Source: Piromyces finnis finn
Taxonomy: Eukaryota; Fungi; Neocallimastigomycota
DNA length: 64,000 bases
Direction of reading: 5' to 3'
NCBI GenBank assembly: GCA_002104945.1
Contig: MCFH01000013.1
Coordinates: 124,001 to 188,000 of the forward strand
Of this stretch, positions 3,592 to 25,721 are shown in pieces (positions within the stretch are counted from its first letter, which is position 1; each line of letters opens with the position of its first letter). The position numbers were made by a program, and so were the translations under genes. The notes under the pieces are model-generated. The model had not been told where the DNA came from. It ran no database searches and was given only the letters and a program-made list of their open reading frames with translations.

Positions 3592-4421
3592 TGTAAAATA
3601 TTGTATTAGTTAAATGTATTAGTTAAATAATGTATTTAATACGTATGTAGAACAATGTATAATGTATTGAATTAATGTACCGTAAATTTTACAAAAATTT
3701 ACATCACAATACATTAACATAAATTTATGTAAATTTAATTTTATGATAAGATAAAGTTTTGATGATAAAATAAAATTTTAAAATTAAATAATTTTTAACC
3801 AATAAATATTTGAGATAAGAAAAAATTTTTTTTATAAACTAAGCCTCAAAATTAGAAATAAATAAATTAAATATATGTTTGAAATATAATCAACCATATA
3901 GTAAATAAATCAAAACTTTATTTTAAGTTTAGAAAATTCTTTAGTAAATAAATTGAATTTAAATAGTTTAATACAAATAATTTCTTTTAATAAATGTATA
4001 AATGTAAACAATGTAAAATTATAATATTAAAACATGTATATTAGAATTTATTCAATTTATTTAAAAAGTATAAATAAAGAAAATTTCTCAACTATTGAAA
4101 CGATAGTTGGAAAATAGTAATTAATCCAATTGTATCATTATTATTAATAATATTAGATTATTAATAAAGCTTATAATAAAACATTTTTTATTTAATTGAA
4201 AACTGATTACCTAGCGAAGGCTCTGGTTAAATAACCTTCGTGGTAAAGTAATCAGCAGTTGTCATAGTTTAGAAGATAAAGTTATTATTTAAATAAATAA
4301 AAAAGTATTAAAAAATAAATTGGAATTTTTTCTTTCTTTTGTTTTGTATTGTTGTTTTGTTAGCACAGACCTAAATCCAATAATTTAATTTAAAGGTTAG
4401 ATTTAAATTAAATATTTTACA
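3592..4421 (+). repeat. 5' LTR of element B
   Basis: Direct repeat of 9287-10116; same length; no difference seen in the stretches compared by eye; TG...CA ends. Confidence 0.97.
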
Positions 4422-4432
4422 ATTTTCCAACT
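4422..4432 (+). promoter_or_regulatory. Self-priming (Tf1/sushi-type) primer binding site of element B
   Basis: ATTTTCCAACT directly after the LTR is the exact reverse complement of AGTTGGAAAAT at 4105-4115 in the LTR, 36 nt downstream of the start of TATAAATA (4069-4076); no TGG tRNA-type PBS. Confidence 0.85.
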
Positions 4433-4481
4433 TTTTAGAATAGTGGATTTACCTTTGTGTGGGAAATAAATAAATAAATAA

Positions 4482-4518
<37 letters not shown>

Positions 4519-4568
4519 AAATAGTGAGAATTTAATATTAGAATTAAATTCGGGGATATATATATGTG

Positions 4569-4603
<35 letters not shown>

Positions 4604-4646
4604 TGAATAATAGTAGAATAAATATAATAGATAGAATAGTATTATT

Positions 4647-4683
<37 letters not shown>

Positions 4684-4736
4684 GATTTTAGAATAGAAAG
4701 GAATTTGTAGGATTTGGATAATCGAGGATTAAAATT

Positions 4737-7700
4737 TTGGAAATAAGGAATAATTTAGATTGTATTGTTTGGTGGATAATATATTTTAGTATGAACGGGG
4801 AATATAGGTATATCGACAACTGTAATGGTAATGGAGTAGCTGGAATCAGTGACGACGATTCTGAGGCTAGCTCCATGGAAATAGAACATGAGGATGGCGA
4901 AATCGTCAACGCCAGGGATAACCTCATACCAAGACCACCGAAGTTTTATGGAAAAAGGAATGAGTTAGCAAGTTTCTTTGCTAAACTCGAAAAATATTTC
5001 AAGTATAATCTAAGACAGAATGCTACCGAAGCTTACAAGATTGATGTACTTAGTTGCTATTTAGAAGGACCCGCCGCCGAATGGTATGCCGACTTGGAGA
5101 AAGAAGAAAGCCCTTTAATAAAATCTTATGAAGACCTTAAAGCCGCAATGCAAGCAAGGTACCGAACGTGCACGAGTTCTGATGTGGCTAATAGAAGATT
5201 AACGAAGCTCAACTACAAACAATTCAAAAGTGTGATGGATTACTGCGACTGTTTCGAAAAAACTTCTAGGGACTCGTCTTTTGACGATGAAGCCAAGATA
5301 CATTTCTTTGTAGAAGGATTGCCGCCGTCTGTTCAGGAGAAGACAAAACTAGTATATCCTAAGATAAGAAAGCTGTATGATCTAATCAATACTGTAGCTG
5401 CCAATATTGAAGAAGACTGGAGAATCTACGGAAAGGACCCAATGAATATAGATGGAGAAAGAGGAAGAAGATATAACCGGAATCTAGGAAAGCGACTCTA
5501 CCAAGGGAATTATGGGATGAAATTCAACAACTACCGAGACTTTCATCACGAGGAAAAAGTACAAAAGACCAAGAAATGCTTCATTTGTAAATCAACAGGA
5601 CATTTGAAGAAGGATTGCCCAATGCTCAAAGATAAATTGGCAAACCGCCCAAAAGCATTCATGATCAAGGAAAACAGAAAACAGCACTTATTGAATGTTT
5701 TCGATGTTGTACTTCATGTCAATCGAGGAATCTCACTAAATGCGTTAGTTGACTCAGGATCCGACTTGGAATTCATGGATTGGAAAACGGTCAATAAATA
5801 TAGAATACCAATCCAAAGGATGATGAAAGACAAGTTTGTGGAAGGACTGGGAGGAAATGGATTACTGAAGTATGAAACGATCCCGTTGATCATGTCTATC
5901 GGCAATCACAAGGAGTCTATTCAATTTTATATTACGACTCTACCTTCAGACGTATCACTTATTTTAGGAAACAAATGGCTAAGAAAACATGATCCGATTA
6001 TCAGTTTCAAGAATCAAAAATTAGAGTTTAAGTCTGAATTTTGTAAGACGAATTGTTGCGCTACTGATGAAGAAATAAATGAAAGAATTGAACAAAATAA
6101 ATTAAAAGAAGAGGAAGATAAAAGAAAGAGATTAGAGTTAGCTGAAGAAATTATTAATAATTATAAGAATAGTTTAGTTATTAGAGATAGTAAACTTAAA
6201 AATAAAGAAAATGTATTAGTAATAGAAAAGAAAAAGAAAAAGTCATGTATAAATAAAAAATGTAAAACATCAAAATTAAATAAAATTCTTCATCAAAAAT
6301 ACTTAGTATGTTGTGCGATTACAAGTGATAATGATGGTACACCTGAAGTCCCAAATGAATACAAAGAATTTAAAAATGTATTTGATGAAATTGAGTGTAA
6401 TGAGTTACCTCCTCATCGAATATATGACTGTAAGATTAAATTAAAGGATGATAATGAATTATTTTATGGACCATTATATCCTCTAACCGAGGAAGAGAGG
6501 GAAACGTTAAAGGAATATTTAAAAGAAAATCTAGAAAAAGGATTCATAAGACCCTCAACTTCACCTGCTGGAGCACCTGTACTGTTCGTTAGGAAAAAGG
6601 ATGGAACTTTAAGATTGTGTGTTGACTACCGAAGACTCAATGAAAACACAATTAGGGATTCATATCCGTTACCTCTTATATCCGAATTATTCGATAGGTT
6701 AAGAGAAGCTAAAATTTTTACTAAACTTGATCTCAAGTCTGCTTATAATCTAGTCCGAATAAATAAAGGCGATGAATATAAAACTGCATTTAGGACAAGA
6801 TTCGGTCACTTTGAATATCTTGTCATGCCGTTCGGATTAAAAAACGCTCCTGCAACCTTCCAACATTTTATCAATGATGTCCTCGGGGAATATTTGGATG
6901 AATTCGCGTTTTCTTATATTGATGATATTCTTATCTATTCAAAAGACTTAGAAGAACACCGAACTCACGTAAAGAAAGTCCTTAAAAAATTACAAGAAAA
7001 TGGGTTATATGTAAAATTAAGCAAATGCGAATTTGAAACGAATAAAACGTCATTTTTAGGTCACATAATTTCGGACAAGGGCATCTCCATGGATCCAAAG
7101 AAGGTAGAAGCAATTATGAATTGGCCAATTCCAAAGACTGTAAAGGAAGTTCAATCATTTTTGGGTTTATGCAATTACTATAGAAGATTCATTCCGAACT
7201 TTGCAGAAATAGCGAAACCTTTGCACAATCTAACAAAGAAAAATGTAGTTTTTGACTGGACTATAATTTGTAATAATGCTTTTGAGAAGTTAAAGCAGTG
7301 CTTCACTGAAGAACCAATTTTAGTACATGCCGATCCAGAATTACCTTATATAGTGGAAACTGATGCTAGTGATTTTGCAATTGGTGCAGTATTATCTCAA
7401 AGATTAAACAATAAGGAACTACATCCAATTTGTTATTTTTCAAGAGGACTTACTAAGTCAGAAAAGAACTATCCGATCTACGATAAAGAATTATTAGCGG
7501 TTATATGTGCACTTAAAGAATGGAGACATTATTTGGAAGGAGCTAAGCATCAATTCACTGTGTTTACAGATCACAAGAATCTTACCTTTCCAAGAAAGCC
7601 TGAATTATTATCTCAAAGACAAATTCGATGGAATTTGTTCTTAACTCGTTACGACTTCAAACTCCAATACAGACCAGGAAAAGAGGGAGGAAAACCGGAC

Positions 7701-9275
7701 TCATTTTCAAGAAGACCTGACTTTCAAAAAGAGGAAATTAAAGATGAAGAAACATTTTCTTGCTTAACTATAAAAGAAATTAAGGAAAACTTATGTTGTA
7801 TTGCAATCCAAGGAAATCTTAAAGAAGAATTAATCAAAGAAGTTAAAGAAGATACGGAAATACAAGAATTAACAAAAATTCTACAAGGGAATTCTATTGC
7901 AAGCAGAAAGTATAAAAAGCTTATGAAGAACTTTAAATTAAATGAAGAAGGTATTCTTTTGTATAAAGGATTAATTTTCGTACCAACTAAAATGAGAGAA
8001 AACATAATTTCAATTCATCATGATAATCCAGTTCATGGCCATTTTGGTATTATCAAAACCAAAGAATTAATAACAAGAAATTTCATTTGGTTAAACATGA
8101 CTCAAGATATAGTAAAGTATATAGCTTCTTGCAAGACTTGTGGTGCAGCTAAAGACAATCGCCATAAACCTTATGGATTATTGCAACCTTTACCTACTCC
8201 TAGTAGACCTTGGTCCTCGGTATCGATGGATTTCATAACTGATTTACCAAGATCTCATCAGAAAACGGTTATAATGGTTGTGGTTGACAGACTAACAAAA
8301 ATGGCTCACTTTATTCCATTCAGAATGATTCCAACTGCTCAAATTGCAGCAGATGTCTTCTTTAGAGAAATTTTCCGATTACATGGATTGCCAGACGAAA
8401 TTATATCTGATAGAGGAACGCAATTCACTTCTGAATTTTGGCAACGTTTATGTTGCCTATTAAATATCAAACATAATGTTTCAAGTGCTCACCATCCACA
8501 ATCTGATGGTCAAACTGAACGAGTTAATAGCATTCTAGAACAATTCTTAAGATGTTATATCAATAAAAGAAAAGATAACTGGATGAATCTCTTACCTTAT
8601 GCGGAATTTGCATACAATAATACACTACAACAATCGATTAACCAAACACCTTTCTTTGCTAACTATGGTCAAAATCCAAGATTTGATTTAGAAATTCCAG
8701 CTGATAGTGGTAATAGAAGTGCTAACCGTCACGCCTCTCAAATGCAAAACAACATTAAATTTTTAAAGAAAAATTTAGAAAAAGCTAAACAAAGATACAA
8801 GAAATATGCTGATTGTATAAGACTTATTGGTCCGAAATTGAGAATTGGTGATTTAGTTTGGTTAAAGCGTCCTGATTTACTTCCTAAAGGACCTCCTAAA
8901 TTAACTGATAAAAAACTTGGACCTTTTGAAATCATCGAAAAGACTGGACCAGTTTCTTATAAGTTAAGATTACCTGAGTCTTTTAGATGTCATCCTGTTT
9001 TCCATATCTCGAATTTAGAACCTTTTGTAGTGAGAGAAAATAGTGATAATTTGCAACATTCTATCAAGATACCTAATATCGCTACTGATTCATCTGTAGA
9101 AAGAATTCCATTGAAAATAGTTAGTGAAAAAATTGTCAATGGAATCAAGTATTATTTCATGGTTTGGAAAGATCATCTTCCTTCAGAAAGTTCTTGGCTT
9201 AGAGAAGATGAAATTGAGGACCCTCAAATGATTCAAGAATTTCTTAAACACAAGTCGCTCAGGGGCTCGACTTAA
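4737..9275 (+). CDS. Gag-Pol polyprotein of element B (capsid, CCHC, protease, RT, RNase H, integrase, chromodomain)
   Basis: CFICKSTGHLKKDC; ALVDSGS; YIDDILIYS; VETDASDF; HHDNPVHGH...CKTC, MDFITDLP, SDRGTQF, DGQTER; GPFEI; C-terminal YYFMVWKDHLPSESSWLRE chromodomain. True start may be ATG 4791 or 4875. Confidence 0.98.
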   Translation: MEIRNNLDCIVWWIIYFSMNGEYRYIDNCNGNGVAGISDDDSEASSMEIEHEDGEIVNARDNLIPRPPKFYGKRNELASFFAKLEKYFKYNLRQNATEAYKIDVLSCYLEGPAAEWYADLEKEESPLIKSYEDLKAAMQARYRTCTSSDVANRRLTKLNYKQFKSVMDYCDCFEKTSRDSSFDDEAKIHFFVEGLPPSVQEKTKLVYPKIRKLYDLINTVAANIEEDWRIYGKDPMNIDGERGRRYNRNLGKRLYQGNYGMKFNNYRDFHHEEKVQKTKKCFICKSTGHLKKDCPMLKDKLANRPKAFMIKENRKQHLLNVFDVVLHVNRGISLNALVDSGSDLEFMDWKTVNKYRIPIQRMMKDKFVEGLGGNGLLKYETIPLIMSIGNHKESIQFYITTLPSDVSLILGNKWLRKHDPIISFKNQKLEFKSEFCKTNCCATDEEINERIEQNKLKEEEDKRKRLELAEEIINNYKNSLVIRDSKLKNKENVLVIEKKKKKSCINKKCKTSKLNKILHQKYLVCCAITSDNDGTPEVPNEYKEFKNVFDEIECNELPPHRIYDCKIKLKDDNELFYGPLYPLTEEERETLKEYLKENLEKGFIRPSTSPAGAPVLFVRKKDGTLRLCVDYRRLNENTIRDSYPLPLISELFDRLREAKIFTKLDLKSAYNLVRINKGDEYKTAFRTRFGHFEYLVMPFGLKNAPATFQHFINDVLGEYLDEFAFSYIDDILIYSKDLEEHRTHVKKVLKKLQENGLYVKLSKCEFETNKTSFLGHIISDKGISMDPKKVEAIMNWPIPKTVKEVQSFLGLCNYYRRFIPNFAEIAKPLHNLTKKNVVFDWTIICNNAFEKLKQCFTEEPILVHADPELPYIVETDASDFAIGAVLSQRLNNKELHPICYFSRGLTKSEKNYPIYDKELLAVICALKEWRHYLEGAKHQFTVFTDHKNLTFPRKPELLSQRQIRWNLFLTRYDFKLQYRPGKEGGKPDSFSRRPDFQKEEIKDEETFSCLTIKEIKENLCCIAIQGNLKEELIKEVKEDTEIQELTKILQGNSIASRKYKKLMKNFKLNEEGILLYKGLIFVPTKMRENIISIHHDNPVHGHFGIIKTKELITRNFIWLNMTQDIVKYIASCKTCGAAKDNRHKPYGLLQPLPTPSRPWSSVSMDFITDLPRSHQKTVIMVVVDRLTKMAHFIPFRMIPTAQIAADVFFREIFRLHGLPDEIISDRGTQFTSEFWQRLCCLLNIKHNVSSAHHPQSDGQTERVNSILEQFLRCYINKRKDNWMNLLPYAEFAYNNTLQQSINQTPFFANYGQNPRFDLEIPADSGNRSANRHASQMQNNIKFLKKNLEKAKQRYKKYADCIRLIGPKLRIGDLVWLKRPDLLPKGPPKLTDKKLGPFEIIEKTGPVSYKLRLPESFRCHPVFHISNLEPFVVRENSDNLQHSIKIPNIATDSSVERIPLKIVSEKIVNGIKYYFMVWKDHLPSESSWLREDEIEDPQMIQEFLKHKSLRGST

Positions 9276-12113: not shown

Positions 12114-12762
12114 ACTATAATACAGAAATAAAAGTAATAAAATATTGTATTATATTATAAATAAATACATTAATAATTTATAAATATATGTATTGATCGT
12201 ATATTTAAATATATTTAGAAAAAATATTAAAAATAATTTTAATCGTTTTATTTTAAAATATTTTATAAAACATATTTAAATATAATTTTGTTAAATTAAT
12301 ATAATCATTAAATGTTATAGTTTTTTTTTTTTTTTTTTTTTTTTAAAAAATAATAAATTAACAAACATATGAAATAAATTGAAAAGAATTAAATTAGTTT
12401 TATTTGCAATGCTAATTATTATTATTTTGTTATAAATTGCATGTTAAATATCACTAAAAAAATGATAAAATAAAATAATTATTATATATACAATTTTCGG
12501 ACGGTTTTCTTTTTATGATATTTCTTATTGTGGTTTTTAAAAACCACAATAATTTATTTAAAGTGTATTATTATTATATAATAAATATTAAAATTTTAAC
12601 ATACTGAAATTAAAAAAAGAAAATTATAATTAAAAAATATATAATACAATATACAAAATATATAATATATGACAGATTATTTAGTATTATTTAGTAAAGA
12701 TCCTAATCCTAGCACTTTTATACCAGATAAAGTCTTTCCTTAGCAAACTTTTTTAAATATAG

Positions 12763-13110
12763 AAAATAAAATAAAATAAAATAAAATAAAATAAAATAAA
12801 ATAAAATAAAATAAAATAAAATAAAAATAAAATAAAATAAAATAAAATAAAATAAAATAAAAATAAAATAAAATAAAATAAAATAAAATAAAATAAAATA
12901 AAATAAAATAAAATAAAATAAAATAAAATAAAATAAAATAAAATAAAATAAAATAAAATAAAATAAAATAAAATAAAATAAAATAAAATAAAATAAAATA
13001 AAATAAAATAAAATAAAATAAAATAAAATAAAATAAAATAAAATAAAATAAAATAAAATAAAATAAAATAAAATAAAATAAAATAAAATAAAATAAAATA
13101 AAATAAAAAT
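12763..13110. repeat. (AAAAT)n microsatellite, about 350 bp
   Basis: Direct reading; explains the FYFIL-repeat ORFs 12718-13134 and 12753-13118. Confidence 0.98.
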
Positions 13111-13728
13111 ACTTGCAAGGGTAGGTATCCTCAAATTTCTTGTAAGAGAATATAAACTGATAAATAAATTTCGTCCATAGTTATTAAAATTTTTATTATA
13201 TAAGCTATTGACACTCCAAAAACTTTGATAAATTAGTGATTTAACTCTATAACTTTTATTTTTATTGGATCCAGATAATGGAGAAATAATATGAGACTCT
13301 ATTTAAATTATAGGAATGAATGACTATATATTTTTGAATTAATAAGAACACAATTGTTGGTGAGAAAGCTCTTAAAAAAGAAAATAGGGATTTTTGGACT
13401 TTTTTGTACATGTTAGATAGAATAAGTATCAGAGAAAGATCTTTGTCAAAGAGGATTTGAAATAATTATAACATAATATAATAAAATTTTTAAATTCTTT
13501 GATGTTCTTTTATAAAGCCTATGGGTTGAATTTTTCTTTTTGAAATTTTTCTAATAAAAGATTTTAATTTCTATATATCATTACCATGTTTCTTTTAATT
13601 TTTTTTTCTATAAAAGGTCTTTATGCCAAAAAATAAGAAGAAAATTTAAATTTCATAAAAATTTGATAATTGAAAAAAAAAATAGTATTAAATGTTATTA
13701 TTATCAAGAGCTTTAAATAATACTTAGG

Positions 13729-13760
<32 letters not shown>

Positions 13761-14153
13761 TTTTTATTATTTAAATTAATAATAAATAATTATATAATTT
13801 TTATGATGTTATATTTATTATATTTATTTTCTAATATATTCAATATTTAAGATTTTTTAAAAAAAATAAACAGTTTATATAGGATTTTTGTCAAAATAGA
13901 AAAACAAATTAAAATAAAATTATAAAATTAAAATGAAATTAAAATAAAATTTAAATATTGATAATAATTTTTTCTATTATTCTATAGATATTTTTTTCTT
14001 TCAAATTTACTATTATAAACAAACATGTGTTATGTATCTTATTGCTTATTGCTTGTTTTGTTGGTTTAGTGGATTTCATTTTGCTTCTTTTTTTTTTTAT
14101 TTTAATTTATTGGAAATATTAGGCTATGAATAGTTATGATTAATTATTTTTGT

Positions 14154-17100
14154 TTACCAACATTGACCAAATTCCGATTGACAGCCTTCTTCTTTACTAC
14201 AATAAACTTTAGTATTACCACACCATCCATATTTACTACAACAATATCCTTTTTGACATTTGCCAATGTCTTTACCACATTTACCAATGTTGGTGGTATT
14301 GCGTTGTTGATAGGTTTTACAAGAACCAAATTCAGATTGGCATCCTTGATTAATATCACAATAAGCACTAGTTTTACCACACCATCCATGTTTACTACAA
14401 CAATATCCTTTTTTACATTTGCCAATGTTTTTACCACACTTGTATGTTATTGAGGATGGTTGAATTGTAGAAGTAGAAGAATGCTTTTTACCTTCACATC
14501 TACCAAATTCAGATTGACAACCTAAACTAATTTTACAATGTTTATTAGAGAGTCCACACCATCCATACTTACTACAACATTCATTATTATCACAGGATCC
14601 ATACTTTTTACCACATCGACGGTTATCTTTATTGTTTTTTTCTTCTTTAGTAGTTTCATTTTTTGATTCATTCTTTGATTCAGTTGATTCAACAGTGCTT
14701 GATGATTCATACATAGCTTTACATTTTTCACCATTATTTCCATTCATTGTACTATTTATTTTTTTCAGTCATAAATTAATAAAAAAATAATTTTTATAAA
14801 AGTTAGTTTATTTTTTCTTTTTCAAATTTAATTTATATTTTTATATAAAATGAAGGTAATTTTACATCATCATTTTCATTTTTTTAATTCCTTCAGGAAG
14901 AGAAGTAATACAATTATTATCTATATATCTTTTTTTTTTAAAAAAAGAAAAATAAATTAAAATTAGAATTAAAATTAATTTCTAATATACAAATGTTTTA
15001 TATTTATAGTAGATGCTTACAAATATTCAAGATTAATAGAATTTTTAATTGAATCAGGAATTGTTGTTAAGTAATTATCATTCATTATTCTTTATTAAAA
15101 ATATATTTATGGTATTATAGATTATTAAAAAATAAATTTAATTAGTTTTTTTTAAAAGTAAAAGTATAATGAGAAAAAAGAATACATACAATTCAAAAAG
15201 ATTTGTTATTTTGTCAATAGAATCAGGAATTTTTTTTATAGAATTTTTACTAAAATCTCTATTAAATTATTATTTATTGATAATAATAATAATAATACGA
15301 AAAAAAGAATTGATTATTAATAAAAACAGTTTGATTTCTCATTTACAAAAAATTATATTTCAATTGAAAAAAAAAGATCCATACATTGTATTAAGATGAG
15401 TGAGGTTTTCAAGTATAACAGGAAATTCTGTAAAGTTATTTCTACTTAAATCTCTATTAATAAAATAGTTTAATAAAAAAATAAATATAAATTAATAGGA
15501 TTAAATTTCATAATATTATTATTATATATATTAGGGAAACCTACAATAATCCATTAAGAGTATTAGTATTAATTGTATCAGGAATGTCAGTTAATCTATT
15601 TCCACTTAAGTTTCTATTAAATATAATATTTAATAACATATATTATAATTAATAAAAAGTAACTTTTATATAAATTATTAATCGTATTAAAATATATACA
15701 AATATTGAACATTATTAAGATTTCCAATAGCGTCAGGAATGGTAACCAATTTATTATCCTTTAAATTTCTATTCAATATATATAAAAAAGGCTTAATAAT
15801 TTTTTTTCTAAAATACATTTTATATTTTTATAATGGAAAAAAAATTAAAATTATAAATGACATACAAATGAAAAAGACTGAAAATATTTCCAATGGTATC
15901 AGGAAGTGTAGTTAATTTATTTTCAAATAAAGAACTATTTATAAGTTATTTAAAGCAATTTATTTAATAAATAGTATTTATGGCTTATAGATGATGATAA
16001 TAGGTATCGAAAAAAAAGTATAAATTACAAAACTCCAAGCTTTGAAAGATTTCCAATCGAATCAGGAAGTGTAGTTAGATTATTTCCATTTAACTCTCTA
16101 TTAAATGTTTTTTGTTTTTAATATACATATTTATATCATTAATAAAAATTACAATATACTATAGTTTTATGATCTAATAAAAAATGAATAGAATACAATT
16201 GAAAAAGATTTGAAAGATTTCCAATAGTATCAGGTAATTTGCTTATTGTATTATTATTTGCAGATCTAGTAATAATCCATTATTTAAAGAAATATTTTAG
16301 TTTTTATTTTTGGATTTAAATATATATATTATATTAAATAAATGTTAAACGTACAATAACCAAAGATTACTAAGATTTCCAATTGAATTAGGAAGGGTAG
16401 TTAATTTATTATTGCTTAAATTGCTATATAATAGTTTAACAATTTTATATTAAAAATTTATTAATAAAACTATTTAATTATTTAGTTAACTAAATAAAAT
16501 TTTTTTATAAAAAATATATACAATTTAAAAAGCCTAGTAAGATTTCCAATGGATCCAGGAAGTTCAGTTAAATTATTTTTTTCTAAAGTTCTATTCAATT
16601 ATACATTATATGATATTAGTAAACTCTATTGATGAATAATACAATAGATAGATAAACTAGATTTTTTTAAATTTTTTTTTTAAAAAAGTATTTTTATGAT
16701 ATAAAAATACATACAATTTATAAAGTTTAGATAGACTTCCAATAGTATCAGGAAGAGTAGTTAAATTATTGTTATCCAAAGTTCTATTCATTTTTAAATA
16801 TAACTTTAGTCTTTTTTTTCATACTTTTAAAAAAATGTTATTTTTTGATTAAATATATCTACAAAACATACAACCATTCAAGATTAACGAGGTTTTCAAA
16901 TGTATCAGGAAGGGTAGTTAATTCATTTCCATTTAAATTCCTATTTGAAATATTCAAATTTTTAATCCATCATTTATCAATAATTCAATATATTACTTTT
17001 TTCTTTTTACAAAAAAATAATATTACATACAATGATGAAAGATGAAAAAGATTTCCAATTGAATCAGGAATTACTGTTAAATGATTATCATTTAAATGTC

Positions 17101-19236
17101 TTTAAAATTATAAACAAATCATTTCAATTATTTGCATTTTAATTAAAGTGACAAAAAAAAGTATATTATTTTTTTAATTATTAGGGTAAGAGGATTAAAA
17201 AGAAAAAAATGTTTACAAGTATTGAAGATTAGTAAGATTGCTAAAAATTGTATCGGAAAGTGTTGTTAAATTATTATTTCCTACATTTCTATATAATTTA
17301 TTATTATTAAATATAATGGTTAATAAAGTAATATTAAATCATTTATATTATTATACTATAAATGGCGAAGGAAATAAAGCATACATACAATTCAATAATA
17401 TTATTAAGACTTTCAATGACTTTTGGAAACTCTGTTAATTTATTTTCACTAATATTTCTATTAATAACAAGTATTTTATATGAATACAGAGTTAATATTT
17501 AATTTTTATTTTAATATTCAAATTAAAAAAAAAAAATAATAAAAATACTTACAAAATGCATAGATTTTTAAGTTTTTTAAAGGAATCCGGAAAGGTGTTT
17601 ACATTATTATTAACCATATATCTATTAAAATTAAAATAATAAATTAAAAAAGTTATTATTAATATCTACTTTTTTTATGATATATATAAAAATATAATAA
17701 TATAAAGAAAAGATTTCATACAAAGAATAAAGGTTTGTAAGATTTGAAATTGAATCAGGAAGTGTTGTTAATTTATTATTTGCTATACACCTGATATACA
17801 TATATTCATAGAAATGTTTATTTAATTTAATGGATCTGATTTATTATATTTTCCAAATATTTTATATTAAAGCAATAAAAAAAAACAATACAATTCTTTA
17901 AGATTACTAAGACTCGAGATTGAATTAGGAAGAGTAGTAATGTTGTTATCATCTAAATTTCTATATAAATTTAATAATATATTTTAAAAGTTTTCTTTAA
18001 TACTATGACTTTATAATATTTTTAAAAAAAAGGAAAAAGAAAATTATACAATTGAGAAAGATTAGAAAGTTTTCCAATGGTTTCAGGGAGTGTTGTTAAT
18101 TTGTTATAGTTTAAATACCTATTAAAATTAGAATGTTATTAATAAATTTATAGATTTTATTTGGTATAAAAAAAGAATAATAATATAAAGGAAAAAGGAA
18201 AAAAATCATTACAAAACATAAAGCTTTTTAAGATTTGAAATTGAATCAGGTAGATTTGTTAATTCATTATATTCCAAGTATCTATTAAATATTTTCATAG
18301 TAATTAGTATTTTAGTTTGATTAATTTTTTTCAATATTATTTTTTAAAAATAATATATAAAACAAACTGGCATTAAATTAGTACAATTCTTCAAGATTAC
18401 TAAGTTTCGAGATTGATTCCGGAAGTGCAGTAAAATTATTATTATTTAAATGTCTAGGAAAAATTTAATTTTATATTTTAATATATATATAATTTTATTT
18501 TATTTATTTTTTTTTTTTAATTTTTTTTATTAAAATATTTTATTTAAAAAAAAAAAAAAAAAAAAAAAATACATACAGATTCTTAAGATTCTTAAGATTT
18601 CCTATAGTATTAGGAAGTGTTGTTAATTTGTTATTATATAAATATCTATTAAATATTTAGATAAAAAAGATATATATAATTATTAAATCAAATTTAATAA
18701 AGCATTTTTATTTTTTTTTAAATTATACATTATAGAATTACAAATTAGTAAGATTGGTAAGATTGCCAATTGAATCCGGAATCTCAATTAAATCATTACT
18801 ATTTATATATCTATATATATATATTTCATTATATAATTTGAAAAATGATATAAAATATTTTATTATTTAGAGTAATATATATAACAATAATAATAATAGT
18901 CTATGCCTTTTTTATTAAAAAAATGTTATATATAGGTGATACTCACAATTTTTCCAAACTAGTTATTTTAAAAATAGCATCTAAAACATTTTTTGTTTTA
19001 ATATCATGAGTTTCTCTAAGAAATATATTAAATATTTTCAAGTTTTTAGTAATTGCTGCATTGCTTTATTTCATTTATTATTAAATATACTTATCCATGA
19101 CTTACATAACAGATATTTTATTATTTTTATTCATAATACATATTTTGAAATGAGTTATCTTTCTAAGTTCATCACACGTATATCCATATATTAATGTGAT
19201 GAATAACACCACATTTAAAATAATTTTTAGTATCAT
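14154..19236 (-). CDS. 27-exon secreted LRR protein with three C-terminal CBM18 (hevein-like) domains, about 816 aa
   Basis: Exons: 19236-19106 (MILKIILNVVLFITLIYG signal), 19015-18947, 18810-18742, 18645-18577, 18453-18385, 18281-18213, 18118-18050, 17960-17892, 17790-17722, 17621-17553, 17457-17389, 17288-17217, 17099-17031, 16940-16872, 16783-16715, 16590-16522, 16423-16355, 16265-16197, 16097-16029, 15934-15866, 15768-15700, 15613-15545, 15453-15385, 15258-15190, 15089-15021, 14928-14866, 14751-14154. All introns GT-AG, phase 2; no stops; consensus LxLxxNxLTxLPDSIGNLxxL; last exon has 3x CGxxxGxCxxxxCCSKYGWCG. Confidence 0.92.
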
Positions 19237-20570
19237 TTTTTTCTATTAAATTCTCAAAAAAAGAAAGAATTTTAAGCAATGTCTTTTTGTATTTTTTGTT
19301 CGTATTATCACTCTTTTGAGTTTTTAAACTTTATAATAATTAAAAAAAAGTTTTTATTTTAAATTTTATTGCTTTTTTATTGTAACTTTTATAAAAATAG
19401 AAAAAGTGTTAAAATGCCCTAACTCGAAGAAGCTAAAATAAAAAAAGCATTTCCTTTTTTTTTTTTTATGAATTTCTTAAGAATTTAAAAAAAGAAATTT
19501 TTTAATTAAAAATTAAATAAACAATTAAAAATAATATATGCAAAGTAAAACATAATATTATATGATTAATATATTATTATTATATTATCATTCGAATGAA
19601 TTGATAGTTCGATTTCTTTTTTCATTTTAAACATTCCATAAAAGTTTTAATTAAATTTATATTTAATAAATGCTATTGTACTGTATTGTAATATATGTGA
19701 AATAAATCAAATAACGAAATTCTAAATATATTAATATATATTATTAATTGAATTATTAAATATTGGCATTTGATAAAAAAAAAAAAACGAACTAAATTGA
19801 ATAGTTTGCATAGTTTTCACTTTTTTTTTTTTGCTTTATTTAAAATGCGCTTTTTTATTTGTTATTAATATTGAATTTCTTTTACAAAAGTATCAATTTT
19901 TATTGTTATGAATGTAAAAAAAAAAGTATTAAGTTATAAGTATGCATATATATAATTTCAATTTTTAAAAGAAAATTTTTGATTTTATCATAAAGAAATT
20001 CTTAAAATTTTAAATTAAATAAATTAATTAAATATATTCTAATGTATTATATTCATATATTATAATTTATTTTATATTATTTATATCAATAATTGGATCA
20101 TCCATTTTTTACTTTTTATATTTAAAAATTGATATAAAATAATTTGAAAAAGCTTGCTAGTGAACTATGAAATTAATTAGTACTAAAGCCATATTATTTT
20201 TTTTGGTATTATTGAATATTCGAAGAAATGCTAGTATAACTTTATACTTTATTTTGTTTGTATTATTCTTTTTTCAAATTATGATATTTTTTAAAAATTG
20301 AGTATCAATCACAATCTAAATCAATGAATAAATATTATAAAAAAAGATTTCTGTCATTTTTCAGGAGAAATTCATAAACTTAAAAAAAGAAATTTTTTAA
20401 TATTTATATATATGTAATAAATATATTGAATGTATTCTAAATATATTAAATTAAATAGTTTTTTAAATTATAATTAATAAATAAATGAATGTAAATTATG
20501 TATTAATGATAATATTAAATTAATCCTCTATTTAAATATATTATATTGTAATAAATATGAATAGATAATA

Positions 20571-22367: not shown

Positions 22368-25300
22368 CTAATTTTTAATAAAGGTACTTTCAGCTGGACT
22401 ACCATAAACAGTAGCTAATTTTCCCTTGTAAAGTGTCATTCTAATTAAAGCAATGTTTGGATCACATTGGTAATAACGAATGGTGTGAATACCTTCATCA
22501 AGAGTAATATTTTGTTTGTAACTTCTTCTACCGTTATTTTCAATATCAGCAGCCCAAGTACCTTGTTTCCAAGTACCGGCTAAGTAGTCTTTAACAAGAG
22601 TATTAATAATATCGATTTCACCATTGTCAATGCTAATACCGTATCTTAATTGTTCCTTACCATAAATAAGATTACTAGTTGGGTTGAATTGACTTTCTAA
22701 ATTGTATTCACCCTTAGCTGGAATGTATACCTTGTATTCAACGTATGGAGCATTCTTTAAGTCATCAACTGTTTCATAGGTAATAGTAGAACTACTGGTT
22801 CTTACAGTGCTTAAATATTTACCATTATCTGGAATAACAATCATTTCATTCTTAACGAGCTTTCCTTGGTTATTGATACCCTTACCGTCAACCTTCTTAC
22901 TGAAGTTGGCAACATCAAGAGTAACATAATCATGAGTCATTACATAGGTCTTTGGTTCTAATTTAGCATTATCGATGACCTTGGCTTCAACCTTAACATG
23001 AACTTCTTGTTCACCAGAAGTAATAACAATCATACCTTCAGAATCCTTATTTATTTTTTTCCAGTTAATACTAACTTCAATAACCTTTTCTTCAGCAACC
23101 TTACCACTTTTAGTAGAGAGTTTGATCCACTTATCAGCAGTAGCCTTGAATTTGTAGGCACTACCCTTGGTAAGAAGTTGAATCTTGAAGGTTTCATCAC
23201 TAACACTGTTGAAGGTTGGTAACTTTGTTTCACCTTCGGTAACGACATTCTTGAAACTGTCGGTAATGTCTTCAACTAAAATTTGCATTTCAGAAGATGA
23301 TTCTGGATTAACGGTCATTAAGTCTGGAAGCTTACCACTGTCACGATCCCAAGCTTGAAGACCAATGTGGTAGTTTTGACCACAAGAAATCATACCACTC
23401 CACTTTTTACCTGATTCAACAACACCTGGCATCTTTTCATTATAACCATCGAATAATTCATTATCAAGATCAATGGCTTCTTGGCATAATTTAGCATACT
23501 TGTTAGCAACGGTAAGACCAAGTTTAGCGTACTTGTTGTTTAAAGCAGCGTAGATTTGAATCTTTAAAACATTTGGAACAGCCATAGCTGGATAGTAGAC
23601 AAGTTGATAGAAAGAAGCCTTGACATCATCAGGAACCTTTGCCCATAAAGCTTCAGTACGTTTCATAATATCATCACATTCTTCAAGAATGATAAGAGCT
23701 TCGTTGTAATTGTCGATACTGTACATATCGGAACAAGTGTCAACAGTGTTGTATAAAACATGTTCGACAACACGCTTGGTTTCAAGATCAAGGTATCTAT
23801 CAATAAGGTTAGCAGCTTCTTTACATTCTTCATCGCTTAAGCCACTACCATCTTTTCTACTAAATTGTTGTTTAGCCCATTCGAATTTGTATTCGTCAAT
23901 TCTCTTGTGACCTGCAGTACCAAGGTATTCATAGTCATAAGCAAGATCAAGGAAGTAGGAGATGTTAATTTCCATTGGTTTTAAATCACCAACATTAGCA
24001 ATCCAGACACCTTCAATTCCATAGTCGTAAGCAATAGACATTTGATCCCAAATAGTAGAGATTTGTGTGTTTTGAACCCAGGTGTAAGATTTTGGAGCAC
24101 CAACATAGTCAAAGTGATAATACATACCAGAACCAGCAATTTGCTTTTGTTGATCAAGAGTTGGTAAAGTTCTCATGTAAGCCCAGTTATCATCACAGAA
24201 CATAGCATAAGTTTGCTTCATACAATCTTTATTGTATAATTCACCAGCATACCAAGCGTCTTCAACTTCCTTATAGATGACTAATTGAGTTGGATTGGTA
24301 TCCTTATGATCCTTTAAAATTCCCTTTTGAGTATTGATAATGTAGTTAAGTAAGTCAGCGTATCTTGGTGGATCGTCAGCAGCTGGAAGAGTGGAATCGT
24401 TTTCACCTCTCATACCGACAGTACAAATGTTTTCGAATTCTTTGTTTCTGATAACACTTTCAGTCCAGAATTCTTCGATTTCCTTGTTAACTTCTGGATG
24501 GTAGCCTTCTTGACCTGGAATGTTGTAAAGATTCCAAGCTTCAGCAGAAGTGTAGTTTAAGTCGTTTCTGTAGTAGTTAGCCCATTCACTACCGGCACGG
24601 TAAAGTGGTTCATGGTGAGAAGTTCCCATAACAATACCGTACTTATCAGCAAGCTTAGCACTGGCAAGACTATCACCTACACCATCAGCACTGAAAGTGT
24701 CACCCCACATGGCTGGCCAAAGGTAGTTTGCCTTTAAACGAATTAAAAGTTCATAAACTTGACGGTAGAAGTATTGATTTCTTCCACCGTATCTTTTGTC
24801 TGTCCAAGTGGTAAGAGATGGTGCTTCATCATTAAGGAAAATACCACGATATCTAATAGATGGTTCCTTTGAAATGATATTACATTCTCTGCCTGGAAGG
24901 GTAACGCTAGATTGAACAGCAGGTAAAACATCACTCCACCAAACCCATGGAGATACTCCCATCATTTCAGAGATATGCATCATACCGTAAAGGGCACCAC
25001 GTTTGTCACTACCGACTATAACAAGAGCTTCGTCAACTCCAGTCATTGGTGATTTAACTACTTGCATTTGATAGCATTCCCAACGACCTTCAAGTCTCTT
25101 TAAGTCAATCTTTTTGGTATTGACAAGTTGGTTGATTACATCATTACCCTTTTCACCTGCAGTACCAACAATAATAACTCTGCCAGATAATTTTTTAGCA
25201 TCAGTTTCAATTTTTAAACCATTCTTACTTTCAACAGCATTACCTTCCTTATCGATTTTATCGCCAATAACTCTGGCAACATCAGATCTAAGAGCTTGAG

Positions 25301-25721
25301 CAATAACACTAATACCATCATATTCAGAATCGTTTTCGTCAATGTAAAGACTGGCCATCACCTTGGAATTCTCAATTAAAACAAAATCCTTTGAAGGTAA
25401 ATAGATTTTTGGAGCAATTTTTTGATTTCTAATTGGCATGTGTGGTACATCATCTTGTTCATTGTTTTCTTGATCATCGTTTTCTTTTTCAGAGTTTTCT
25501 TCGTCAGAAACAATTTCCTCAACATCGATAGCTGCAGAAACATCTTCAACATCATCATCACTAGATTCTTCAACACTAGAAGTAGCTATTTCAATAGAAT
25601 TATCCTTTTCATGAACATTTTCAGAAATTGAAAGATCATTTGGAATATTTTTAGCGGATGAGGAAGAATATTGGCATTCGAAAATAAGAGCCAATAAAGC
25701 TAAAGTGTTAATAAATTTCAT
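22368..25721 (-). CDS. Secreted GH115 xylan alpha-1,2-glucuronidase, copy 1 (intronless)
   Basis: Signal peptide, acidic linker, GSDKRGALYG, GVSPWVWW, RYRGIFLNDEAP, KANYLWPAMW, GTSHHEP, GMRG, YYHFDYVGAP, NVGDLKPME motifs. Confidence 0.92.
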   Translation of the reverse strand: MKFINTLALLALIFECQYSSSSAKNIPNDLSISENVHEKDNSIEIATSSVEESSDDDVEDVSAAIDVEEIVSDEENSEKENDDQENNEQDDVPHMPIRNQKIAPKIYLPSKDFVLIENSKVMASLYIDENDSEYDGISVIAQALRSDVARVIGDKIDKEGNAVESKNGLKIETDAKKLSGRVIIVGTAGEKGNDVINQLVNTKKIDLKRLEGRWECYQMQVVKSPMTGVDEALVIVGSDKRGALYGMMHISEMMGVSPWVWWSDVLPAVQSSVTLPGRECNIISKEPSIRYRGIFLNDEAPSLTTWTDKRYGGRNQYFYRQVYELLIRLKANYLWPAMWGDTFSADGVGDSLASAKLADKYGIVMGTSHHEPLYRAGSEWANYYRNDLNYTSAEAWNLYNIPGQEGYHPEVNKEIEEFWTESVIRNKEFENICTVGMRGENDSTLPAADDPPRYADLLNYIINTQKGILKDHKDTNPTQLVIYKEVEDAWYAGELYNKDCMKQTYAMFCDDNWAYMRTLPTLDQQKQIAGSGMYYHFDYVGAPKSYTWVQNTQISTIWDQMSIAYDYGIEGVWIANVGDLKPMEINISYFLDLAYDYEYLGTAGHKRIDEYKFEWAKQQFSRKDGSGLSDEECKEAANLIDRYLDLETKRVVEHVLYNTVDTCSDMYSIDNYNEALIILEECDDIMKRTEALWAKVPDDVKASFYQLVYYPAMAVPNVLKIQIYAALNNKYAKLGLTVANKYAKLCQEAIDLDNELFDGYNEKMPGVVESGKKWSGMISCGQNYHIGLQAWDRDSGKLPDLMTVNPESSSEMQILVEDITDSFKNVVTEGETKLPTFNSVSDETFKIQLLTKGSAYKFKATADKWIKLSTKSGKVAEEKVIEVSINWKKINKDSEGMIVITSGEQEVHVKVEAKVIDNAKLEPKTYVMTHDYVTLDVANFSKKVDGKGINNQGKLVKNEMIVIPDNGKYLSTVRTSSSTITYETVDDLKNAPYVEYKVYIPAKGEYNLESQFNPTSNLIYGKEQLRYGISIDNGEIDIINTLVKDYLAGTWKQGTWAADIENNGRRSYKQNITLDEGIHTIRYYQCDPNIALIRMTLYKGKLATVYGSPAESTFIKN

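What the first reader, a model, noticed from the sequence alone, without database searches (positions are those of the whole stretch)
14154..19236. Hidden secreted LRR solenoid fused to three chitin-binding domains
Seen: the ORF track shows only the CBM18 tail, but splicing yields signal peptide, Cys-containing N-cap, 25 LRRs, a Ser/Glu/Lys linker and 3 CBM18 domains. The intron before the last exon has a CTAAC branch point and a phase-2 acceptor (AATAG|T ACA ATG AAT GGA AAT). Known: LRRs are recognition scaffolds; CBM18 binds chitin; amphioxus VCBPs pair a variable recognition domain with a chitin-binding domain in the gut. Inference: a cell-wall-tethered recognition or adhesion protein, a candidate fungal non-self receptor or effector.
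Basis: partly seen in the sequence, partly recalled or inferred. Interest (0 to 1): 0.88.

Follow-up and report, generated by a model that had tools for sequence, protein, structure and literature searches.

The report
Gut-fungus LRR protein with chitin anchor
A 27-exon gene of the anaerobic gut fungus Piromyces finnis encodes a secreted protein with about 24 leucine-rich repeats followed by three chitin-binding modules; it is a real, apparently unannotated member of a large, uncharacterised family in gut fungi, and its role in recognition is unproven.

Summary
On the minus strand, 27 exons (19236..14154) joined by 26 GT-AG, phase-2 introns give an uninterrupted 816-aa reading frame. It has an N-terminal hydrophobic leader and a two-Cys cap. 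Then come 24 full 23-residue LRRs, one per 69-nt exon, a Ser/Glu/Lys linker and three Pfam Chitin_bind_1 (CBM18) modules.

Four RNA runs of the same organism hold 0.25-0.32 of the locus's 31-mers. A fully spliced mRNA carrying both parts predicts 0.32-0.34. No RNA run was shown to hold intron 26.

It has the weakest donor of the 26, and an in-frame TAA overlaps that donor.

Gene structure supports the joint. In an annotated P. finnis paralogue and an Anaeromyces homologue, the last exon starts at the same LRR position and carries the cap, linker and CBM18s in one exon. Intronless mRNA-like contigs of relatives encode leader, LRRs and CBM18 in one frame.

About half of the 120 nearest CBM18-tail proteins carry LRRs. 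The others carry CotH, serpin, deacetylase or chitinase, so the tail looks like a general wall anchor.

This scan has already flagged the same architecture at ten or more other loci of this genome, and one was followed up. The receptor or effector function remains inference.

The parts
19106..19236 (-). Exon 1: start codon, hydrophobic leader (residues 1-20) and an N-terminal cap with two Cys (C21, C33)
   Evidence: The N-terminus aligns with the leader plus C-x(11-20)-C cap of relatives derived from mRNA-like contigs.
18947..19015 (-). Exon 2 (69 nt, phase 2): degenerate half-repeat that ends the N-terminal cap
14866..18810 (-). Exons 3-26 and their introns: 24 LRRs of 23 residues with consensus LxLxxNxLTxLPDSIGNLxNLxx. 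One repeat per exon, with every intron splitting the first Leu codon (TT|GTA).
   Evidence: The repeat profile matches Leptospira LIC11098 (E 1e-44) and SHOC2 (E 1e-21) among PDB chains. Single exons hit Pfam LRR_4, LRR_8 and LRR_1 weakly. Places 18011-18051 lie inside this span and were kept out of all searches.
14752..14865 (-). Intron 26 (114 nt, GC 11%). It has the weakest donor of the 26, and an in-frame TAA overlaps the donor, so retention would end the protein after the LRRs.
   Evidence: Of 15 sampled words, only a DNA run holds them.
14715..14751 (-). Start of the last exon: (I)TMNGN continues the LRR register at positions 1-6, followed by a reduced C-terminal cap with one Cys. The ATG at 14747 is LRR position 3, not a start codon.
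   Evidence: The last exons of the P0278 and P0122 genes begin (I)DLKGN and (F)LCFGN in the same phase.
14622..14714 (-). Linker rich in Ser, Glu, Lys and Asn (about 31 residues)
14154..14621 (-). Three CBM18 (hevein-type) modules at about 14618-14493, 14441-14316 and 14281-14157, each with 8 Cys and the CCSK[YH]GWCG motif, then the stop codon at 14156-14154
   Evidence: Pfam, E 5e-25. One search aligns them to pokeweed lectins C/D and wheat germ agglutinin. Searches confirm the motifs and Cys positions.

Best explanation
One gene, apparently missing from public protein sets, encodes an 816-aa secreted protein of the Neocallimastigomycota LRR-CBM18 family. The N-terminal leader sends it into the secretory pathway. 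The three C-terminal hevein-type CBM18 modules bind chitin, most likely that of the fungus's own wall, and so act as a non-covalent anchor. The flexible Ser/Glu/Lys linker holds out a solenoid of about 24 LRRs whose variable concave face binds a partner that is still unknown. Shown here: the exon-intron model, the domains, the family, the shared gene structure, and bulk transcription with splicing. Inferred: the last exon joint, secretion, wall anchoring and ligand binding.
For: The 27-exon frame is open and all its splice sites are canonical and in one phase.

CBM18 is confirmed by Pfam. Its Ser/aromatic motif matches solved chitin-binding lectins.

The LRR profile matches solved LRR proteins.

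The stand-alone CBM18 ORF has a hydrophilic N-terminus (mean hydropathy -1.1) and no leader, although each module needs four disulfides.

RNA runs X1-X3 hold 0.30-0.32 of the locus's words. Expected shares are 0.317-0.340 for all exons spliced, 0.21 for the LRR part alone and 0.11 for CBM18 alone. Only a DNA run is shown to hold the words of intron 26.

P0317 is a 735-aa uninterrupted frame with leader, LRRs and CBM18 on 2.4-2.5 kb contigs from three samples, so it comes from spliced mRNA.

The P. finnis P0278 and A. robustus P0122 genes have one LRR per 69-nt exon in the same phase. Their last exon begins at the same LRR position and includes the CBM18s.

About 59 of the 120 nearest tail relatives carry LRR Pfams. 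The others carry CotH, serpin, CE4, GH18 or subtilase, which fits a general anchor module.
Against: The joint 14866/14751 was never seen in a read. Its donor scores lowest of the 26 (1.0 bit, most others 5-13), and ATG TAA overlaps it, so a product with LRRs only is possible.

The blank for RNA over intron 26 came from a 'kind any' search with 15 words, and the tool itself says that is no search for RNA.

The four-Cys C-terminal cap typical of the family is reduced to one Cys here.

No experiment shows secretion, chitin binding or any ligand.
Confidence: 0.62

Rival explanations
1. There are two products. The LRR gene ends at the TAA that overlaps the last donor and gives a free, secreted LRR protein. 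The CBM18 exon is then a separate gene, an untranslated 3' part, or an anchor exon that is used only sometimes.
For: The donor is the weakest of the 26, and there is an in-frame stop right at the donor.
Against: The CBM18 ORF has no leader. Its first residues continue the LRR register exactly as in the terminal exons of paralogues. All 24 Cys are intact. The 114-nt gap would have to hold both a terminator and a promoter. No RNA run is shown to hold the gap's words.
Confidence: 0.13
2. It is a wall-defence protein rather than a receptor. Tethered on chitin, the LRR domain would block foreign hydrolases such as chitinases, lysozymes or proteases, as plant PGIPs block polygalacturonases. The CBM18s would also shield chitin.
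For: The same CBM18 tail carries serpins, which are protease inhibitors, and chitin-modifying enzymes in sister proteins. From general knowledge, CBM18 proteins of Verticillium and chytrids protect chitin from chitinases; the abstract of 10.1101/462499, listed, says this for Verticillium.
Against: No target enzyme is known. The LRR type is the 23-residue SHOC2/Leptospira type, not the plant-specific PGIP type.
Confidence: 0.15
3. It is an adhesin that holds syntrophic partners (methanogens or bacteria), or plant particles, to the fungal surface.
For: CBM18 genes are the most strongly induced CAZyme-class genes when Caecomyces churrovis is grown with a methanogen. The authors suggest a role in fungus-methanogen association (PMC8665504).
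Against: The induced genes are listed only as CBM18, with no LRR noted. They come from a different species. Nothing is known for this locus.
Confidence: 0.1

Closest known systems
Predicted LRR-CBM18 proteins of Neocallimastigomycota, for example Anaeromyces robustus ORX80363.1 and ORX88191.1 ('L domain-like protein'), the Piromyces finnis 'RNI-like protein' P0278, and Neocallimastix ORY26122.1
   Same: All have a leader, a Cys cap, LRRs, a linker and C-terminal CBM18 repeats. Each LRR sits on its own exon of about 69 nt behind a phase-2 intron in the first Leu codon. The terminal exon starts at LRR position 1.
   Different: Identity is only 28-37% in the LRR part and 45-57% in the tail. This gene has more repeats (24) than most, a shortened N-cap and a reduced C-cap. 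None of these proteins has been characterised.
Leptospira interrogans LRR proteins LIC11098, LIC10831 and LIC12759 (PDB 4u08, 4u06, 4u09) and human SHOC2
   Same: They share the 23-residue repeat type NxLTxLPxxIGxLxNL. They are the best PDB matches to the repeat profile (E 1e-44 to 1e-21).
   Different: They have no chitin-binding tail. SHOC2 is cytosolic. The likeness reflects a repeat close to the general consensus and does not show descent.
Hevein-type lectins: pokeweed lectins C and D, and wheat germ agglutinin
   Same: They are tandem CBM18 modules with 8 Cys and the CCS-x-YGWCG motif.
   Different: They are plant lectins without an LRR domain.
Plant LRR-extensins (LRX) and PGIPs (recalled from general knowledge)
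   Same: The logic is the same: an LRR binding domain held in the cell wall by a separate wall-binding part.
   Different: The LRR subtype differs, and LRX uses an extensin anchor rather than CBM18. They are analogues, not relatives.
Amphioxus VCBPs
   Same: A recognition domain is paired with a chitin-binding domain.
   Different: VCBPs use V-type Ig domains and a peritrophin-type chitin module. Neither is present here.

Membership tests
Leucine-rich repeat proteins (Pfam clan LRR) | Tandem repeats of 20-30 residues with LxxLxLxxNxL | tested here: met
   There are 24 repeats. Asn at repeat position 6 is invariant and Pro at position 12 is kept in 22 of 23. The scaffold Leu/Ile positions are conserved.
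Leucine-rich repeat proteins (Pfam clan LRR) | Significant match to LRR models or to solved LRR proteins | tested here: met
   The repeat profile against PDB gives LIC11098 at E 1e-44 and SHOC2 at E 1e-21. The LRR part matches Pfam-certified LRR proteins, P0123 at E 1e-80. Single 22-aa exons match only weakly, best E 3e-4.
Leucine-rich repeat proteins (Pfam clan LRR) | Solenoid fold | not tested
CBM18 / hevein domain (PF00187) | Pfam score above the gathering cut-off | tested here: met
   87.8 bits against a cut-off of 27.8, in 3 stretches.
CBM18 / hevein domain (PF00187) | Eight Cys per module, plus the Ser and aromatic residues of the sugar site | tested here: met
   There are 24 Cys in three sets of 8. 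CCSK[YH]GWCG...[HY]C aligns with pokeweed lectin and WGA.
CBM18 / hevein domain (PF00187) | Binds chitin | not testable with these tools
   This needs a binding assay.
Neocallimastigomycota LRR-CBM18 family | Leader, Cys cap, LRRs and C-terminal CBM18s in one polypeptide | tested here: inconclusive
   The frame, the register, the gene structure of paralogues and the k-mer shares all agree.
Neocallimastigomycota LRR-CBM18 family | One LRR per exon, a phase-2 intron in the first Leu codon, and a terminal exon that starts at LRR position 1 | tested here: met
Neocallimastigomycota LRR-CBM18 family | Four-Cys C-terminal cap (GKTLxNE..C.Y...LC...C...C) | tested here: not met
   Only 'GEKCKAMY' remains, with one Cys. 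The cap is reduced in this member.
VCBP (amphioxus) | V-type immunoglobulin domains | tested here: not met
   The frame holds only LRR and CBM18.
PGIP / plant-specific LRR | 24-residue repeat with LxGxIPxxL | tested here: not met
   The repeat here is 23 residues with LTxLPDSIGNL.

The most novel reading that the evidence does not exclude
Every LRR sits on its own symmetric phase-2 exon, so skipping any exon keeps the frame. The family could therefore make many different binding surfaces on one chitin anchor, by alternative splicing or by exchange of exons between paralogues. That would give gut fungi a diversified surface-recognition system for partners or competitors, for example methanogens. 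Retention of the weak last intron could also switch the protein from wall-bound to free.
Probability: 0.06. Interest if true: 0.85.

Novelty: new member of a known kind. Interest (0 to 1): 0.42.

Why it matters
CBM18 is among the most expanded modules in anaerobic gut fungi, and its genes are strongly induced by methanogen co-culture (PMC8665504). Yet most CBM18 proteins have no known partner domain or role. LRR solenoids turn out to be the most frequent partner, and the same tail also carries serpins, CotH, deacetylases and chitinases. Together these point to a chitin-based surface-display system that works alongside the dockerin/cellulosome system. This locus adds one of the longest arrays (24 repeats). 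It also shows that such many-microexon genes can be missed by annotation, so family counts in these genomes are probably too low. The function is open and can be tested with simple binding and localisation assays.

Tried and rejected
No splice joint could therefore be read. Exon 7 was left out of alignment A1, and the second run search used 14722-14895. Local scripts did use the translated model, in which one Leu codon takes two bases from the edge of those places. One search printed splice-site strings inside the sandbox only.

2. I looked for the locus's own protein (108-345 aa; 511-1627 aa; representatives of any length). None was more than 65% identical. Lengths of 346-510 aa were covered only by the 50% representatives.

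3. A third homologue search with the LRR part of P0150 filled up with generic LRR proteins from archaea, bacteria and plants. It says nothing about origin. The higher identity to those proteins (37-47%) reflects a near-consensus repeat, so I do not read it as gene transfer.

4. Tandem Repeats Finder found no DNA-level repeat of 160-170 nt. Exons are about 63% alike and the introns are not alignable, so the array is old.

5. I looked for exon-skipping isoforms among cluster members. The differences were end truncations and, in one member, one CBM18 unit more or less.

6. The Atlas search gave only weak leads: LRR+CBM1 clusters at score 0.90 with 144 shared features.

7. Literature searches found no paper that describes LRR-CBM18 proteins. 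The supplement of PMC8665504 does not say whether the induced CBM18 genes carry LRRs.

Full report
**What is there.** The region is very AT-rich: exons have 25% GC and introns 4-20%. The ORF list shows only one long frame, a 197-aa ORF at 14154..14747 on the minus strand. The minus strand shows a strict pattern of 69-nt blocks. Each follows an AG and ends TT|GTA, and each encodes one leucine-rich repeat.

A script that searched for AG-N-codons-NN-GT blocks recovered them all. Joining 27 exons gives 2451 nt and 816 aa with no internal stop, and all 26 introns are GT-AG, phase 2 and 86-136 nt long. The LRR pattern occurs 21 times in the 64-kb window, and every hit is inside this gene.

**Domains.**
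- Residues 1-20 are the only hydrophobic segment. There is no internal or C-terminal membrane-like stretch.
- Two Cys (21 and 33) form a short N-terminal cap. It aligns with the C-x(11-20)-C cap of relatives.
- Exons 3-26 give 24 repeats with consensus LxLxxNxLTxLPDSIGNLxNLxx. Asn at repeat position 6 is invariant, Pro at position 12 is nearly so, and the variable positions fall where the concave face lies.
- A profile of 23 of these exons finds Leptospira LIC11098, LIC10831 and LIC12759 (E 1e-44 to 1e-23) and then SHOC2 (E 1e-21) as the best solved relatives. Single exons hit Pfam LRR models only weakly, as expected for one repeat.
- The last exon carries a 31-residue Ser/Glu/Lys/Asn linker and three Chitin_bind_1 modules (E 5e-25, 87.8 bits). 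Each module has 8 Cys and the CCSK[YH]GWCG motif, which aligns with pokeweed lectins and wheat germ agglutinin.

The evidence for the joint is indirect.

1. The stand-alone CBM18 ORF starts with a hydrophilic sequence and has no leader, yet 24 Cys need the secretory pathway.
2. The first residues of the last exon, (I)TMNGN, continue the LRR register at positions 1-6. The ATG at 14747 is therefore position 3 of a repeat, not a start codon.
3. The annotated P. finnis paralogue P0278 and the A. robustus gene for P0122 have the same structure: one LRR per exon of about 69 nt and the same split Leu codon. Their terminal exons begin (I)DLKGN and (F)LCFGN and carry cap, linker and all CBM18s in a single exon.
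4. P0317 (735 aa) is an uninterrupted frame with leader, LRRs and CBM18 on 2.4-2.5 kb contigs from three JGI samples. For a family with an intron in every repeat, this means spliced mRNA. L001 is a shorter example.
5. Four RNA runs of the same organism hold 0.32, 0.32, 0.30 and 0.25 of the 526 sampled 31-mers of 14100-19300. Words lying wholly inside the exons make up 0.317-0.340 of the stretch. The shares would be 0.21-0.22 for the LRR part alone, 0.11-0.12 for the CBM18 exon alone and about 1 for unspliced RNA or DNA. So both parts are transcribed and the introns are removed.
6. For the stretch 14722-14895, which is intron 26 plus 30 nt on each side and holds no word that lies wholly in an exon, only a DNA run holds the words (1.00). 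No RNA run is shown. The tool warns that 'kind any' is no search for RNA, and only 15 words were sampled.

Two points count against the joint. The donor of intron 26 scores lowest of the 26 (1.0 bit, most others 5-13). ATG TAA also overlaps it, so retention would give a free protein with LRRs only. I put the fused product as the main form at about 0.8.

**The family.** The tail finds many Neocallimastigomycota proteins.
- By my count, about 59 of the 120 best tail relatives of 511-1627 aa carry LRR Pfams together with Chitin_bind_1.
- They come from Anaeromyces robustus ('L domain-like' and 'RNI-like' proteins), Neocallimastix species, P. finnis and many unnamed contigs. One search adds Orpinomyces and Piromyces sp. 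E2.
- Other N-terminal partners of the same tail are CotH (about 14), serpin (7), CE4 deacetylase (6), DUF4832/4874 (4), GH18, subtilase, metallophosphatase and a transglutaminase-like domain.
- This spread suggests that the CBM18 tail is a general module for holding secreted proteins on chitin. The dockerin plays a similar part for the cellulosome, and an LRR-plus-dockerin protein is listed in a table of PMC12421816.
- Full-length alignments of my model to these proteins run colinearly across the LRR-to-tail boundary at 31-39% identity.
- No protein from this locus appeared in any search, so the gene seems unannotated. Lengths of 346-510 aa were covered only through 50% representatives.

**Earlier notes of this scan.** The genome is named Piromyces finnis in note s1-185380. 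The record of paralogue P0278, GCA_002104945.1, agrees with that. The scan has flagged the same architecture at ten or more other loci. One follow-up reached the same verdict: the family is real and uncharacterised, and recognition is not proven. Note s1-185562 covers the exon-cassette aspect of this same stretch.

**How it probably works (inference).** The leader directs secretion. The three hevein-type modules bind the chitin of the fungus's own wall, which from general knowledge is the main chitin source in its habitat. The linker holds out a long LRR solenoid that binds something on its concave face.

The partner could be a syntrophic microbe. CBM18 genes are the top induced class in Caecomyces-methanogen co-culture, and the authors suggest a role in physical association (PMC8665504). 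That paper's lists do not say whether those genes have LRRs. The partner could also be a foreign hydrolase, which would make this a tethered inhibitor like the serpin-CBM18 proteins. Plant material or another fungal cell are further possibilities. Nothing here separates these options.

**What it is not.**
- It is not a VCBP relative: it has no Ig domain, and the chitin module is of another family.
- It is not a PGIP or LRX relative, because the repeat subtype differs.
- The likeness to Leptospira and SHOC2 repeats, and the 37-47% identity to archaeal and bacterial LRR proteins, reflect a near-consensus repeat. They are no evidence of gene transfer.
- The introns are not alignable with one another, and no DNA-level tandem repeat survives. 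The array is therefore old, although its uniform intron position points to growth by duplication of an exon-plus-intron unit.
- No exon-skipping isoforms were seen among close variants of five relatives.

**Verdict.** This is a new, apparently unannotated and unusually long member of a family that already exists in public databases as unnamed predictions. This scan has met the family repeatedly. It is of moderate interest, mainly as part of a possible chitin-based surface-display system in gut fungi. The literature searched does not describe LRR-CBM18 proteins.

Noticed in passing
window 4737-9275 (+): An intact 1512-aa ORF that reads as a Ty3/gypsy-type retrotransposon polyprotein. By eye in the translation it has a CCHC zinc knuckle, the reverse-transcriptase motif YIDDILIYS, an integrase HHCC motif and a chromodomain-like end. 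It lies about 5 kb downstream of the gene's 3' end.
   Followed up: no
window 12718-13134: About 400 nt of a short AT-rich tandem repeat that reads as (ILFYF)n in two frames. It is low-complexity DNA about 1 kb beyond the gene's stop.
   Followed up: no
window 14863-14866: The last donor overlaps ATG TAA, so retention of intron 26 would end the protein right after the LRRs and give an unanchored form. This donor is the weakest of the 26. It could act as a switch between bound and free forms.
   Followed up: partly
L003 (A. robustus MCFG01000147.1) 1689-2947 and 4190-5378: The gene for P0122 contains two near-identical blocks of LRR exons plus a C-cap, and a further partial copy lies upstream. 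This looks like a recent tandem duplication, and the 930-aa annotated model may merge two units.
   Followed up: partly
L001 127-468 and 452-1441: An mRNA-like contig whose leader and cap lie in one frame and whose LRRs and CBM18s lie in another, with the two frames overlapping. The cause could be a frameshift, a retained piece of intron or an assembly error.
   Followed up: no
P0125 against P0255: Two Neocallimastix variants that are 99.8% identical differ by exactly one 51-aa CBM18 unit, so the number of anchor modules varies or collapses in assembly.
   Followed up: no
(Atlas): The nearest Atlas clusters to a family member are eukaryotic LRR proteins fused to CBM1, a cellulose-binding module. 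LRR domains may therefore be mounted on several kinds of carbohydrate anchor. The score is weak and this is only a lead.
   Followed up: no
window 22368-25721 (-): An intron-free 1117-aa ORF with a leader. Another note of this scan calls it a GH115 glucuronidase. It has a much higher GC content (about 35%) than the LRR gene.
   Followed up: no
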